Positions 363-23,539 of a stretch of 27,641 nucleotides of DNA are shown piece after piece (positions within the stretch are counted from its first letter, which is position 1; each line of letters opens with the position of its first letter). A program made the translations under genes and the position numbers. The stretch comes from Thecamonas trahens ATCC 50062 (taxonomy: Eukaryota > Protista > Apusomonadida). Location of the stretch: the NCBI RefSeq assembly GCF_000142905.1, contig NW_013657674.1, positions 1 to 27,641 of the forward strand, read 5' to 3'. A model generated the notes under the pieces. It made no database searches, was not told the DNA's origin, and worked only from the letters and a program-made list of their open reading frames with translations.

Positions 363-1448
363 AGCTACGCTACCCACAACCTCACCCAATGTCATCACAC
401 ACCCCACACTATCACCAGTATCAATATCGCTGTCATCGACACTCATCTTCCTCGGCTCACTTTCGCGTCGACTTGTTCTGCCTAGGTGGTTGAGCACGTC
501 CTCGACCGCCCGACCCCGCACACAACCCCCATCACACTCATTGCAAGATATGGCCAATCTGATTTCACAACTACTCTACTACATACACACACTACCCCCA
601 TGCACAGTCTCCAATCCACAGCTGCTGTATTCCGGAATCCGAGTTCTGCCACCTGAGGCCCAACTTGTTGTCCTGGTGTCCCTTCGATGCTGCTGACTCC
701 CCTGCCCCGGGCCCATCTCCGACCCCCACTCCCCACCATCACCACCCACAACCACCACACCCACGCCACACGTACTCACTATGCCTGCAAACATAGCCAC
801 CCTCTTCCTGCCCGCTGATATTGACATCAGCCGACGCCATCCCGTCAACAGCATCGCTGCTGACCGCCTGCTGCTCGCCGCCGACCGCCGCCCGCCGCCG
901 ACCGACCACTGCCGGCACCACCAAGAGCAAGCTAGCCATCGACAGGGCATTGGAGACGATGCATACGGATAGCCACATCAATGGCAATGACTACCAGTCT
1001 GCCCTCCAACCCATTTCTCCCCTCCCTCCTCCGGCCTTGCCCATCACAGCCCCCGCCGGCCGGCTCATCGCCAGCCGCCCCTGCTGCCGACCGCCGAGCC
1101 AGACGACGAAGCCACCGGGCTGGCCAAGACAAAGAATAACAAGAGAGGGCAAGTGCAAGCGATAGGCAATGCAGTGGTGGACTAGAGTGCAGTGGTCTGC
1201 CACCTCTTCCAATCCCAAGCCATCGTCCCCATCGACATCCATCTCAATCCAATCCGTCCGCCCTCCTCCCCCTCGCCGCCCAAGCCCCTCCACCCTCATT
1301 GCCCACACCCCCCACACACCCATTAGCCGTATCATACTCACCTTTAGCAATGCTCAAGCCCAATCGCCATACCCACTGCCATTCCGCCCGTCCCGCCTCC
1401 CACATCACGACCCCCTCATCCCCCCTACCATACTCATTACCACCCGTC

Positions 1449-1810: not shown

Positions 1811-2300
1811 CGTGAACGTCGGCGAGCTGTGGTACTCGCCACATCGCAGAGACGGAACCGAACAAGATGAGACTCAGCAATGCAAGCACCTCTATCCCAC
1901 TCACAGATCAGAGCCCACTTACAGCCGCATCGCGCCGGAAGCAGCCACATCTTGCCTCAACCATCCGATCGCCATCTCGCGACCGGAACCCTTTTGCGAC
2001 CGCCCTTCGTCCTCGTCCTCCAACAGATGCCTACCACGCACACTCTCGTCCATCGAATGCGTTCATCCTATGCTGAAAATACCCGATCCCGTCTCGCTCT
2101 CGGAAGTCAAGCAGCATGAGGCTTGGTTGGTACTGTGGTGGGGGACCACACGGAATATCGAGTAACGCTTTCTATTTTCTTTTACTCGTTGCCCAACTCT
2201 CCCTTCCCTCCTCACTCTCACTCCTCATGATCAGCGCTCGGCTACATGCCACATCGCCCACTCTGGTGGAACGTGCTCCAGCTTGCAACGCATCCCGGTC

Positions 2301-19594: not shown

Positions 19595-22259
19595 TCAATG
19601 GGTAATGTGCTCGTTCTCAAAGGCCTCGCTCCACTCGTCGTAGTCGTCGTCGGCACAGTCGCCGTCGCCGTAGCCGGCGTCGCCATACAGCACGGCCGTC
19701 TCGGCCTGCTCCTTCTTCATGGCAGCAATGCGGATGGCGTCTCCCAGAACCTTGACGGCCTGCGAGTAGGTGATGCGCGAGGTCTCGAACGGGTCGGCCT
19801 CGTTGAGCATGGCAACAATGTCGGCGTGCGAGCGGCCGGGGTCGATGGCGTGGACGAGGTTGCGGAAGTCCTCGTCGTTGATGATGCCCTTGATCTTGGG
19901 CTCAAACGGCGGGAGCGGCTCGAGCGCGCCCGACGCCTCATCGGCGGCGGCGGACCACTTGTCCTCCAGCGCGGCGCGCGCCTTGAGCTCGTTCTCCTTG
20001 CCGGCCTCCCACACCTCGTTGAACAGCCGCGTAAAGTCGCCGAGGAAGGCGTGGTGGCCCTCGAGCTGGTAGTCGAGCACAATCTTGCGGAAGTCCTTAA
20101 AGAGGATCGACCGCGAGGCGTCAGCAGCCTCCTCGCGCCGCAGCGACTTGTACGTCGGCTGGAGGTCGGCCAGCCGCTGCTTCTCGGCCGCCTCGCGCCG
20201 CTTGTCGTCGGCGACCTTGGCCGCCACCCGCTCAACCAGCCGCTCCTGGTCGCGCGGCAGCTCGTAGATCTTCTGAATGAGGAAAATCCACTCCTCCTCG
20301 GTGAGGTAGTCGTTGAGCCGCTCCTGGAAGAGGTCCGTGATTTCGGCCTCGGCCACCTTGGGATTCTCCAGCTTGAGCATGGCGTACAGCAGCTGGTTCA
20401 CCGTCCGCTTGATGGTGTAGTGGTAGTCAAAGAGGTAGTCCTCGTGGAGCTCGTTGTTGAGAATGTACGTAAAGCACTTGACGTCCGGATCGCGCGCATA
20501 GTCGACCAGGCCCTGCCGGATGCCCTCCAGCCAGCCCTTGATGATCCGCTTGAGGCCGTACTTTTGGTTGAGAAAGGTGAACACGTGTTCCTCCATCGTC
20601 TCGTACGGCAGCTGCGACTGCTCGCAAATCTTGTTGTAGTTTTGCTTCGACGCGTAGATCTCCTCGATGAGCGCGTGCAGATTCTTGAGCTTGAGTTCCG
20701 GCCGGAACTTGGGTGGCGGCCGCCGCCGTGCCTCCTGCGCCTTGCGCGCCTCTTCTTGCGCCTTGCGCTCCGCCGCGCTCACCCGCGGCGCCGTCAGCCG
20801 CTGGAACGACTCTGTCATCGTCACCGGCAGCCGCGCGCCCTCGTTGCGCCCTCCACCCCGCGTGGATCCGGCTCCCTCGGACCCGTTCCCGCCGGCACCG
20901 CGCCGCCGGCCGCCGCGCGACGAGCGCGACGCCCGCGACCCGGCATCGTCGCCGATCCCGGACGCTACCGACGCAGACCGCGTCGCCAGCTGCCGTCGAC
21001 CCAGCGGCAGCGTCTGTGTCTCTCCCTCCTCCTCGTCGTCGTCACCGTACTCATCGCCGCCGCAGCCGCCCCGCCCACCGCCGCTCAGCTGGGCCATGTC
21101 CAGCGCACCGCCACCGCTGCCGCCGCCGCCACCGCTGCCGCCACCGCCCGCCGCAGACGCCGCCTTCAGCTTGCTAATCTGCTCGCGGTAGTGGAGCGAC
21201 ATCGACTCGATGATGGCCGGCTGCTGCTCGAGGAACTTTTTGTGCTTGTCAAAAAATGCGTTGACGACGCGGACAAGCCCGGGATTGCCCATGTCTGCGT
21301 CGAGGATCTTCAGCAGCGCCTCCTTGCACACGTCGTAAAACTTGGCCTTGGCCAGGACATACTCGGACGCCCGCAAAAAGATGTCCGAGATGCCTTTGAT
21401 TCGCGAGAACGACTCGTCCATCAGCCGGTGCATCTTCGACTCAAACGCCGCCGTCAGCGCCGCCGCGTCCTTCTTAGAGTACGACGACGAGACGTTGAGC
21501 ACTTCCTTGTACAGATCCGCCACGTCTACACCCTCATTCAATCAACGCCACCAACACCAAGACGTCGACTATGAGTACTCTCGTCTTGATCATGTTGTTG
21601 CTCTTGCTGCGGCTCCTCCGAGCCACCAATGCGAATGCTCAGTTACTATCTAGCGTGTAATAATGATCGACATGCATGCGTTCAGATCAAATGTACAATG
21701 CATCATTGCATGATTGGTGGCGGGTGGGGGGAGGAGGGGAGGGGGGGAGGGAGGGGGGGATGGGGGCGGGGGCGGGCGGAGGGAGGGGGGGGGGGACAAG
21801 GGGAGGGGCGGCGGAACAAGGGCCCAGCCGTTGGACGACCTCCGGGGGGGGACAGTGTTTGACGTGGCTCCACAGGCCGAATGCGACGTCCAACCACGGC
21901 CACAGCCACACACATAACATGACCACTCTTCAACCGTTGTGGTAGTGTGTGGTGGAGGTGCGCGGGGTGGAGGTGGTGGCTGTGGTGCCAGTGGGAAGGC
22001 GTAGGGCTGGTGGGGGTGGGGGTATGAAAAATTGTTGCTACCAAGCAACAACGGCTGGGGAGGATCACAGTCATGGACGCCGTGGGCAAGGAGAGGACGT
22101 ACCCTGAATGTCGGCCTTGGAGAAGGTACAGATACGAGCGAGGGTATCCTTTACACGGGAGGCTGCACTAGTCGGCTCTCCTCCACTGCCGGCCGAGGCC
22201 CCACTGGCCTCGGCCACCTTCTTCTTGCGCCGCCGCCGCCGTTTGACCTGGCCCGACAT
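19595..22259 (-). CDS. TSNAXIP1-like coiled-coil protein with a C-terminal EF-hand-like region. Exons 22259-22103 and 21525-19595 (695 aa)
   Basis: IEEIYASK..LPYETMEEHVFTFLNQKYGLK..DPDVKCFTYILNNELHED resembles the TSNAXIP1-family core. The upstream exon MSGQVKRRRRRKKK..KADIQ splices in frame (G|GTACGT..TAG|AC = Asp), replacing the TTG start in the ORF track. The family name is from recall. Confidence 0.7.
21622..21721 (-). ncRNA. Intronic box C/D guide RNA (snoRNA/scaRNA-like)
   Basis: Sense to the host gene. 9-bp flanking stem GCCACCAAT/ATTGGTGGC plus inner ATGC/GCAT; box C AUGAUGC (21706-21700), D' CUGA (21685-21682), C' AUGUCGA (21673-21667), D CUGA (21642-21639); both guides match conserved target RNAs. 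Confidence 0.82.
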
Positions 22260-22349: not shown

Positions 22350-23257
22350 TCACGATTCTTCGCGCCAAGACTCAAACTCGGCGAGGTCGATGACAAATGA
22401 GCCGGCGTGGGCATGGCCGCCCCCGCCGTACGCAGATGCAAGGGCGTCGATGGTGTACTCGCCCTGCGACCGGAGCGAGACCTTGATCTTGTCGGCGCCG
22501 AGGAGATCCTCGTGGTAGGCGACAACACCGACGGCTGGCCGCCCGGCCGCTGCGCCGGCGGTCGACAGCGCGTTGCCGAGGTCCGACCGGTAGCCAGGCG
22601 TGGCTGTGACGACGGCAAGCACTCCGTCAGCCCACGGCGCCTTGGGCATGCAAAGCACAAACGCGTCCTCGCTTACCGCCCGCGCCACCTCGGCAGCCTT
22701 GCGCGCCTCTGCCTCATCGCCGCGCGCCATCACAGCAGCCACATCGAGGCCGAGCAGCGTGTCAAACACGCCCGGGTTCGCCGCCCCCGACAACTCCAGC
22801 TCGAGATCGTGAAAGCCGGCCGAGAACCGCCGCGAGCCGTCGAGCGCCCACCGCCACAGGTCGCCGTCCTCCACAAACTGGAACATCAGATCCAGGCTCG
22901 CCAGGCTCGCGCCCGCAGGCAGCGCGTGACCAAACAGCGCCTCGCGCGAGCCAGCCTTTCCGGCGTACACATCGCGGGCAATCGTCGCCGCAGACCGCTC
23001 CATGTCCATCACCACCTCGACATTGTCCGGCAGCGCGGCCTTGGCCAGCCACTCGGCTGCACTCTTGTGATGGTCCATGATCAGCACCTCGCCCACAGTC
23101 TCCGCCATCTTTCCCAGAAACGCTTCATTGGCCGTGTAGTCGACAAACACCGCCGCGTCGTCCTTCCCGAACCCCTCGCCGTCGTGCTCAGGCGGCGTGT
23201 CCGGCTCGCAGAAGATCTGCACCGCACACAAGTCAACCACAGCACACGCCACACACA

Positions 23258-23307
<50 letters not shown>

Positions 23308-23539
23308 ACCCAGCACGCGTGAGTCCACGCCCGATCCTCCGCTCCCCCCCTGCCCCTGCCCCTTGCCCCTCAACCCCCTCGCCCGCCTGCCTGCCTCTCC
23401 ATACCCGCGATGGATGCCAGCAGACCTCGGCGGTCGCGCCCGGCCGCGAGTAGAAGCAATGCGCGGCCAGCGCAGCAAAGACCCCGTCCGGGCACGGGTA
23501 GTGATAAAACACATGCACTCGCCGCACAGCGCTAGCCAT
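22350..23539 (-). CDS. DHH/DHHA1-family phosphoesterase (333 aa); intron 23217-23404
   Basis: YHYPCPDG, FVDY, IMDHHKSA, VEDGDLWRW, KVSLRS, YGGGGHAHAGSF; the GTATGG..GTGCAG intron joins the exons in phase 0. Confidence 0.9.
23251..23306. repeat. (CA)n microsatellite inside the DHH-gene intron
   Basis: Near-perfect AC dinucleotide run. Confidence 0.95.

What the first reader, a model, noticed from the sequence alone, without database searches (positions are those of the whole stretch)
21622..21721. Intronic dual-guide box C/D RNA predicted to methylate both U2 snRNA (A30) and LSU rRNA
Seen (minus strand): GCCACCAAU CAUGCA [AUGAUGC] AUUG UACAUUUGAU [CUGA] ACGCAUGC [AUGUCGA] UCAUUAUUACA CGCUAGAUAGUA A [CUGA] GCAUUCGC AUUGGUGGC. 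The D' guide UACAUUUGAU pairs with conserved U2 AUCAAGUGUA (human nt 26-35, one G-U pair); the D+5 rule lands on A30, a known 2'-O-methylated site beside the branch-pairing region that vertebrates modify via mgU2-19/30 (SCARNA9). The D guide CGCUAGAUAGUA is a 12-nt perfect complement of the conserved LSU segment UACUAUCUAGCG, predicting Um at UACU*AUC. Inference: one compact RNA serving both spliceosome and ribosome in a protist; target sequences are recalled from human/yeast, not from this organism.
Basis: partly seen in the sequence, partly recalled or inferred. Interest (0 to 1): 0.82.

Follow-up and report, generated by a model that had tools for sequence, protein, structure and literature searches.

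The report
Intronic box C/D snoRNA, two guides
This is a real-looking but ordinary small nucleolar guide RNA in a probable intron: one guide perfectly matches this organism's own large-subunit rRNA, and the other matches the standard U2 snRNA A30 site, but no U2 gene could be found in the assembly to confirm that second target.

Summary
The quoted sequence is exact on the minus strand. It has full box C/D anatomy and is the only AT-rich island in a 65% GC window (37% GC).

**LSU guide.** The 12-nt D guide pairs perfectly with this organism's own LSU rRNA. The +5 rule puts the methyl on U2588, near E. coli 23S position 2004. At least three metagenomic C/D snoRNA-like loci carry the same antisense element at the same offset from box D.

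**U2 guide.** The D' guide has no credible rRNA target. It matches, in the same register, the antisense element of Rfam's U2-A30 guide family, which puts the methyl on the A30 equivalent. I could not find a native U2 gene. Canonical U6, U4 and U5 were also not found and only U1 was, so the U2 target is plausible but untested.

**Intron.** The snoRNA lies in a probable 577-nt GT-AG first intron that preserves the reading frame.

**Novelty.** One C/D RNA serving both rRNA and U2 A30 is already described: Arabidopsis SnoR31 is assigned 25S A2912 and U2 A31. This is a new member of a known kind, of modest interest. Other first-stage notes report intronic C/D snoRNAs elsewhere in this genome.

The parts
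21634..21711 (-). Core box C/D snoRNA (about 78 nt), from the 5' arm to the 3' arm of the 4-bp terminal stem
   Evidence: Rfam C/D models align end to end here. It is the only box C/box D/stem hit in the window and the lowest-GC island.
21713..21721 (-). 5' arm of the outer 9-bp stem (GCCACCAAU)
   Evidence: Perfect inverted repeat I4. It probably helps bring boxes C and D together during processing (inference).
21622..21630 (-). 3' arm of the outer 9-bp stem (AUUGGUGGC)
   Evidence: I4.
21700..21706 (-). Box C, AUGAUGC (consensus RUGAUGA; last base C)
21686..21699 (-). D' antisense element AUUGUACAUUUGAU. The 10-nt core UACAUUUGAU (21695-21686) is complementary to canonical U2 nt 26-35 with one G-U pair; +5 falls on A30.
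   Evidence: Aligned by Rfam to the snoU2-30 guide consensus UUCUACACUUGAcCUGA in the same register. Duplex computed. Its best native rRNA match is no better than shuffles give.
21682..21685 (-). Box D', CUGA
21664..21673 (-).
   Evidence: Sequence only; neither version matches UGAUGA well.
21644..21655 (-). D antisense element CGCUAGAUAGUA: 12/12 Watson-Crick to native LSU rRNA nt 2585-2596; +5 falls on U2588
   Evidence: Only 2 of 300 shuffled guides scored as well under a lenient G-U scoring. The same element sits at the same 1-nt offset from box D in metagenomic C/D-like loci.
21639..21642 (-). Box D, CUGA
21526..22102 (-). Probable 577-nt GT-AG host intron (CAG G|GTACGT ... GTGTAG|AC). 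The snoRNA's 3' end lies about 96-108 nt upstream of the 3' splice site.
   Evidence: Boundaries and preserved frame read. By eye, weak homology runs across the junction. No transcript data.
22103..22259 (-). Proposed exon 1 of the host gene (ATG at 22259; 52 codons plus 1 nt)
19595..21525 (-). Exon 2 / main ORF of the host gene. It is related to the C-terminal two-thirds of LRR + EF-hand proteins and has no Pfam domain of its own.

Best explanation
A single-copy canonical box C/D snoRNA of about 78 nt is released from the first intron of a protein-coding gene. A 4-bp terminal stem, extended by an outer 9-bp stem, brings boxes C and D together. Its D guide directs fibrillarin-type 2'-O-methylation of LSU rRNA U2588 (near E. 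coli 23S position 2004), 10 nt 5' of the conserved A methylated by U15/snR13-type guides. Its D' guide most likely directs 2'-O-methylation of the U2 snRNA adenosine equivalent to human A30, next to the branch-site recognition sequence. Shown here: the anatomy, the composition island, the perfect native LSU duplex, and the identity of the D' element with the known U2-A30 antisense element. Inferred: expression, RNP assembly, both methylations, the native U2 sequence, and splicing of the host intron. My separate odds are 0.9 that it is a real C/D snoRNA, 0.85 for the LSU target, 0.6-0.65 for the U2 target, and 0.7 that it is intronic.
For: The sequence and boxes are exact. It is a GC island and the only C/D architecture in the window. 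The outer stem is confirmed. Rfam C/D models align end to end. The native LSU lies at G000:C44:6027-9688, and the 12/12 match is unique in the rDNA locus with 0.01 expected by chance; 2 of 300 shuffles scored as well. L041/L042, L044 and L046 carry the same 12-mer 1 nt from CUGA, with box C and terminal stems. The D' element aligns with Rfam snoU2-30's guide in the same register, giving a 10-bp duplex with one G-U and +5 on A30. It has no competing target in native SSU, 5.8S, LSU, spacers, 5S, U1 or the U6-like RNA, and 238 of 300 shuffles do as well on rRNA. U2 Am30 is guided by scaRNA9 in human, and U2 A31 by SnoR125/SnoR31 in Arabidopsis. The intron has GT-AG ends and keeps the frame. Across the junction, KADIQ|DVADLY resembles DADMQQVQRLY of P0002.
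Against: No native U2 was found. Rfam U2 gave nothing. Four U2 5'-region patterns and the stem-loop IV loop pattern gave no U2. I inspected all 15 GATCAARTNTA and all 17 ATCAARTGTA sites in the genome, and none is U2. So if U2 is in the assembly, its nt 26-35 differ from the canonical sequence. The predicted duplex has a G-U pair directly beside the target nucleotide. Box C' is degenerate and box C ends in C. The metagenomic RNAs that share the D guide do not share the D' guide. Arabidopsis does not methylate the equivalent LSU U (no site between A2257 and A2282), so that site is lineage-restricted. There are no expression data, and overall folding energy is no better than shuffles (z = -0.47), as is usual for C/D RNAs.
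Confidence: 0.6

Rival explanations
1. It is a single-function LSU snoRNA. The D guide methylates LSU U2588, while the D' spacer is an orphan or decayed element whose resemblance to the U2-A30 guide does nothing.
For: Native U2 was not found and no canonical nt 26-35 sequence exists in a U2-like context in the assembly. C' is degenerate. There is a G-U pair next to the target. The D' guide is not shared by RNAs carrying the same D guide.
Against: By my rough estimate, an in-register 10-bp match to one particular known site has a chance of about 1e-5 per guide, so even about a hundred orphan guides in a genome would rarely produce one. The D' box is a perfect CUGA at the correct distance. The element equals the Rfam U2-A30 guide apart from one transition that keeps pairing.
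Confidence: 0.28
2. The D' guide acts on a different RNA: a divergent native U2 at a shifted site, another snRNA, a tRNA or an mRNA.
For: This organism's snRNAs may be unusual. U1 scores only 52 bits, and the only U6-like RNA has CGC in place of the AGC triad. Canonical U2, U4, U5 and U6 were not detected.
Against: No alternative target was found in anything I could test. The match to the canonical site is specific and in register.
Confidence: 0.07
3. It is not a functional RNA: a chance constellation of short motifs, or a dead snoRNA copy in non-coding DNA.
For: There are no expression data and no Rfam family hit at gathering score. It is single copy with no relatives available for comparison.
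Against: It is a sharp AT-rich island in a GC-rich genome, with all four boxes in the right order and spacing, a 4+9 bp closing stem, and a 12/12 rRNA duplex exactly 1 nt from box D.
Confidence: 0.05

Closest known systems
Arabidopsis thaliana SnoR31 (with SnoR125 for the same U2 site)
   Same: A canonical box C/D snoRNA assigned by RiboMeth-seq and guide matching to both an LSU rRNA site (25S A2912) and U2 A31, the plant equivalent of human A30. It is the same functional combination proposed here.
   Different: The LSU site differs (A2912 against the U equivalent to about At-2272, which is not methylated in Arabidopsis). I did not compare the sequences, so homology is unknown.
Vertebrate scaRNA9 / mgU2-19/30 and Rfam RF00493 snoU2-30
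   Same: It has the same antisense element against U2 nt 26-35 in the same +5 register. The consensus ..UACACUUGAcCUGA compares with UACAUUUGAUCUGA here. Human Am30 is assigned to scaRNA9.
   Different: It scores 17.6 bits against a gathering score of 60, and only the box C-guide-box part aligns. Here the element sits before D', not D. There is no U2 G19 guide. It is a single short C/D unit carrying an rRNA guide instead, and no Cajal-body signal can be assessed.
Other dual rRNA/snRNA guides: mgU6-77 (U6 and 28S), yeast snR81 (U2 and 25S, H/ACA), Arabidopsis SnoR24 (25S C2837 and U2 A39)
   Same: One guide RNA serves both a spliceosomal snRNA and an rRNA.
   Different: The targets differ and, for snR81, so does the guide class.
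Unnamed metagenomic C/D snoRNA-like loci L041/L042, L044 and L046
   Same: They carry the identical 12-nt D antisense element CGCUAGAUAGUA one nucleotide before CUGA, with a box C and a terminal stem, so they predict the same LSU Um.
   Different: Their 5' (D') guides are unrelated and none is complementary to U2. They match no Rfam family. The organisms are unknown.

Membership tests
Box C/D snoRNA (2'-O-methylation guide) | Box C (RUGAUGA) near the 5' end and box D (CUGA) near the 3' end | tested here: met
   AUGAUGC at 21706-21700 (6 of 7; last base C) and CUGA at 21642-21639.
Box C/D snoRNA (2'-O-methylation guide) | A terminal stem that juxtaposes boxes C and D | tested here: met
   AUGC/GCAU 4 bp next to the boxes, plus an outer 9-bp perfect stem.
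Box C/D snoRNA (2'-O-methylation guide) | An antisense element of at least 10 nt ending 1-2 nt before box D or D', with the target at the fifth pair | tested here: met
   The D guide is 12/12 Watson-Crick to native LSU 2585-2596, with 1-nt spacing and +5 on U2588.
Box C/D snoRNA (2'-O-methylation guide) | An internal D' and C' box pair | tested here: inconclusive
   D' is a perfect CUGA. C' is degenerate, either AUGUCGA or CGAUCA. Degenerate C' boxes are common in eukaryotes (general knowledge).
Box C/D snoRNA (2'-O-methylation guide) | A stable small RNA bound by fibrillarin, Nop56, Nop58 and Snu13, with the target actually methylated | not testable with these tools
   No transcript or modification data are available.
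U2-A30 guide (Rfam RF00493 snoU2-30 / scaRNA9) | Reaches the family's Rfam gathering score | tested here: not met
   17.6 bits against 60; partial alignment only. It is not filed as a member of this family.
U2-A30 guide (Rfam RF00493 snoU2-30 / scaRNA9) | An antisense element complementary to U2 nt 26-35 that places A30 at +5 | tested here: met
   Met against the canonical sequence and the family consensus guide: 10 bp with one G-U.
U2-A30 guide (Rfam RF00493 snoU2-30 / scaRNA9) | Complementarity to the organism's own U2 snRNA | tested here: inconclusive
   No U2 gene was recovered from G000 by Rfam or by six patterns. Canonical U6, U4 and U5 are also not recovered.
Intron-encoded snoRNA | Lies within a spliced intron, in the sense orientation of the host gene | tested here: inconclusive
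   There is a GT-AG intron at 22102-21526 on the same strand, the frame is kept, and there is weak by-eye homology across the junction. There is no RNA-seq, and BLASTP of exon 1 alone is not significant.

The most novel reading that the evidence does not exclude
In a protist lineage without close sequenced relatives, a plain nucleolar-type C/D snoRNA with no recognisable Cajal-body features carries the U2 Am30 guide together with a lineage-restricted LSU guide. Together with Arabidopsis SnoR31, this would argue that U2 Am30 and the mixing of snRNA and rRNA guides in one ordinary snoRNA are ancestral eukaryotic traits, and that dedicated scaRNAs came later.
Probability: 0.45. Interest if true: 0.4.

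Novelty: new member of a known kind. Interest (0 to 1): 0.3.

Why it matters
It adds an annotated snoRNA with one solid rRNA target to a poorly studied, GC-rich protist genome, and predicts an LSU Um site that Arabidopsis lacks. From my own recollection, which I did not check here, the yeast and human maps lack it too. If the U2 half holds, it is one more data point that U2 Am30, the precursor of m6Am30 beside the branch-site recognition sequence, is guided by ordinary C/D snoRNAs outside animals and plants. It does not open a new question, because dual rRNA/snRNA guides and U2-A30 guides are both established.

Tried and rejected
**Searches for the native U2, all negative**
- Rfam RF00004 on the whole genome at E up to 10.
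- Patterns for the U2 5' region, the branch-site region and the stem-loop IV loop.
- A wobble-tolerant target pattern, which gave one coding-like hit.
- Every genomic GATCAARTNTA and ATCAARTGTA site, inspected one by one.
- A promoter-similarity search using the region upstream of U1 found only itself.

**Look-alikes ruled out**
It sits in a weakly H/ACA-like fold, where AGAUCA would serve as box H, and is not U2.
- The antisense of that site (UACACUUGAUCUGG) has no box C and is not a second U2-A30 guide.

**Other snRNAs**
- Canonical U6, U4 and U5 were not recovered.
- U1 was recovered.
- Because several snRNAs are missing, I read the absence of U2 as uninformative rather than as evidence against the target.

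**Alternative D' target**
- LSU G2691 pairs at 13 of 14 positions, but three consecutive G-U pairs cover the target nucleotide. I rejected it.

**Rfam**
- No family reaches gathering score for the locus or for the metagenomic look-alikes.

**Host gene**
- The protein has no Pfam domain. I did not confirm the label 'TSNAXIP1-like'. Its homologues are LRR + EF-hand proteins.
- BLASTP of exon 1 alone against P0002 is not significant.

**Literature and copy number**
- A literature search for the guide/target 12-mer returned only rDNA primers and rDNA insertion-site papers.
- The snoRNA has no paralogue in the genome.
- The organism was not identified.

Full report
**1. Observation**

| Feature | Sequence | Window coordinates (minus strand) |
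|---|---|---|
| Outer stem, 5' arm | GCCACCAAU | 21721-21713 |
| Terminal stem, 5' arm | AUGC | 21711-21708 |
| Box C | AUGAUGC | 21706-21700 |
| D' antisense element | AUUGUACAUUUGAU | 21699-21686 |
| Box D' | CUGA | 21685-21682 |
| Box C' region (degenerate) | AUGUCGA or CGAUCA | 21673-21664 |
| D antisense element | CGCUAGAUAGUA | 21655-21644 |
| Box D | CUGA | 21642-21639 |
| Terminal stem, 3' arm | GCAU | 21638-21635 |
| Outer stem, 3' arm | AUUGGUGGC | 21630-21622 |

One spacer nucleotide separates the D guide from box D. The outer 9-bp arms are perfectly complementary (I4).

The element stands out by composition. It has 37% GC in a window averaging 64.5% (sd 6.6%). Every 78-nt window with GC at or below 42% in the whole 27.6 kb falls within 21621-21722. 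A generic scan for box C, box D and a 4-bp closing stem finds this locus and nothing else on either strand, against 0.16 hits expected in shuffles.

Rfam gives no hit at gathering score. With relaxed thresholds, several C/D models align end to end at 21634-21711(-): SNORD36 at 21.7 bits and SNORD63 at 18.9 bits. Overall folding energy is no better than shuffles (z = -0.47), which is normal for C/D RNAs with unpaired guides. The RNA is single copy in the 28.7-Mb assembly.

**2. The LSU guide**

The assembly's own LSU rRNA is at G000:C44:6027-9688(-), scoring 2510 bits. SSU and 5.8S lie upstream of it.

- The target UACUAUCUAGCG occurs once in the rDNA locus, at LSU nt 2585-2596, with 0.01 matches expected by chance.
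- The duplex is 12/12 Watson-Crick. The fifth pair from box D falls on U2588.
- Only 2 of 300 shuffled guides reached the same score under a lenient G-U scoring.
- Alignment to E. coli rrlH places U2588 at about 23S position 2004.
- The site lies 10 nt 5' of the A that corresponds, by spacing to the downstream G, to the A2282/G2289 pair methylated by U15 in Arabidopsis.
- Arabidopsis has no Nm between A2257 and A2282. From my own knowledge, not tested here, neither the yeast nor the human map has a site at this position. So the site is lineage-restricted.

It is not unique to this organism, though. One metagenome scan for box C, the 12-mer and NCUGA returned six contigs. L041/L042 (tandem copies), L044 and L046 show a UGAUGA box C, a closing stem and the identical antisense element 1 nt from CUGA. 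None matches an Rfam family.

**3. The D' guide and U2**

Against native SSU, 5.8S, LSU, the rDNA spacers, 5S, U1 and a U6-like RNA, the D' element has no convincing partner. Of 300 shuffled guides, 238 do as well on rRNA. The best rRNA hit, LSU G2691, needs three consecutive G-U pairs across the target, so I rejected it.

Against the canonical U2 segment the element forms 10 contiguous pairs with one G-U, and A30 is at +5. Independently of anyone's memory, Infernal aligned box C, the guide and box D' to Rfam RF00493 (snoU2-30). That family's consensus guide, UUCUACACUUGAcCUGA, sits in the same register as UUGUACAUUUGAUCUGA here. The one internal difference is a C-to-U transition that keeps pairing as G-U. 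The score, 17.6 bits against 60, is far below family membership.

Published maps support a conserved target:

- Human U2 Am30 is assigned to scaRNA9 / mgU2-19/30, and Am30 is the substrate for m6Am30.
- Arabidopsis U2 A31 is methylated and assigned to SnoR125 and SnoR31.

By my rough estimate, a chance in-register match of this quality to one given site is about 1e-5 per guide.

**4. The native U2 could not be checked**

- Rfam U2 found nothing in G000, even at E up to 10.
- Patterns for the 5' region, the branch-site region, the stem-loop IV loop and a wobble-tolerant target found no U2.
- I inspected all 15 GATCAARTNTA and all 17 ATCAARTGTA sites in the genome. They are coding sequence, intron or spacer sequence, two tRNA upstream regions, or the snoRNA itself.
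- The closest look-alike, a 14-nt stretch at C4:125963-125976, lies in a weakly H/ACA-like fold.

The invariant U6 core is also absent at up to 2-3 mismatches. U4 and U5 were not detected. U1 is present with a canonical 5' end, at 52 bits.

An intron-containing eukaryote cannot lack these RNAs. Either the genes are missing from the assembly or they are divergent. The G-U pair beside the target and the degenerate C' box further lower confidence. I put the U2 assignment at about 0.6-0.65.

**5. Context**

- On the minus strand, an upstream DHHA1-domain ORF (22350-23309) ends at a stop codon at 22352-22350.
- An ATG at 22259 opens 52 codons plus one base, ending at 22103.
- GTACGT follows at 22102. 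GTGTAG ends at 21526, and the reading frame continues into the long ORF 19595-21541.
- That makes a 577-nt intron. The snoRNA's 3' end is about 96-108 nt upstream of the 3' splice site.
- Homologues of the ORF are LRR + EF-hand proteins such as one from Naegleria lovaniensis, at 29-32% identity. They carry about 200 extra N-terminal residues that this gene lacks.
- By eye, the exon 1 end KADIQ followed by DVADLY resembles DADMQQVQRLY in P0002 across the junction. BLASTP of exon 1 alone is not significant.
- I rate the intronic reading at about 0.7. Other notes report intronic C/D snoRNAs elsewhere in this genome, which I did not check.

**6. Comparison and verdict**

The locus meets the sequence-level criteria of a box C/D methylation guide. 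It works like, but is not a member of, the snoU2-30/scaRNA9 family.

The closest functional precedent is Arabidopsis SnoR31, assigned to 25S A2912 and U2 A31. Other dual rRNA/snRNA guides include mgU6-77, snR81 and SnoR24.

This is a good annotation and a testable prediction, but a new member of a known kind. Interest is 0.3.

Noticed in passing
L029:1501-1605 (G000:C7:485429-485533, + strand): A U6-like RNA (Rfam U6 26 bits, E 0.002) with a 5' stem-loop, AUAU, ACAGAGA and a T10 terminator. It reads UGAUU-CGC where the invariant AGC triad should be, and no canonical U6 exists in the assembly. It is either a very unusual U6 or an unrelated Pol III transcript.
   Followed up: partly
L047:1501-1669 (G000:C10:232060-232228, + strand): A U1 snRNA gene (52 bits, below the gathering score of 69.5) with a canonical ACUUACCU 5' end and an AAUUUGU Sm site. 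It is the only major spliceosomal snRNA I could recover from this assembly.
   Followed up: partly
L003:1438-1581 (G000:C4, about 125901-126044, + strand): The 14-nt U2-like stretch AGAUCAAGUGUAGU noted by another reader (s1-744034) sits in a hairpin-AGAUCA-hairpin-ACA arrangement. It weakly matches H/ACA snoRNA models (19 and 16 bits), so it may be an H/ACA snoRNA rather than anything related to U2.
   Followed up: partly
L072:1501-1510 and L073:1501-1510 (G000:C32:305371-305380 and C34:150488-150497, minus strand): The motif AATCAAATGTA ends about 40 nt upstream of two tRNA genes (tRNA-Arg UCG, and a tRNA with an odd 4-nt anticodon call). It may be a Pol III upstream element. The same 10-mer is the complement of the snoRNA's D' guide, and I take that to be coincidence.
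   Followed up: partly
window 2055-2173 (+): A 5S rRNA gene (Rfam 89.5 bits) lies near the start of the window, unlinked to the rDNA unit on contig C44.
   Followed up: no
window 21722-21830 (minus strand): A C-rich tract of about 110 nt runs directly into the 5' arm of the snoRNA's outer stem. Similar C-rich tracts appear in introns or spacers at several other loci of this genome (L006, L007, L013, L039, L070).
   Followed up: no
L041:778-853 and 1213-1288 (-); L044:172-245 (-); L046:538-612 (+): These metagenomic C/D snoRNA-like genes carry the identical LSU antisense element CGCUAGAUAGUA before box D. L041/L042 hold two tandem copies 435 nt apart. In L044, the 5' guide is complementary to the LSU segment just upstream of the same target.
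   Followed up: partly
window 19595-21525 (-): The host protein aligns with the C-terminal two-thirds of LRR + EF-hand proteins but lacks their N-terminal LRR region of about 200 aa. It also has two long Gly/Arg-rich insertions. No Pfam domain is detected.
   Followed up: partly
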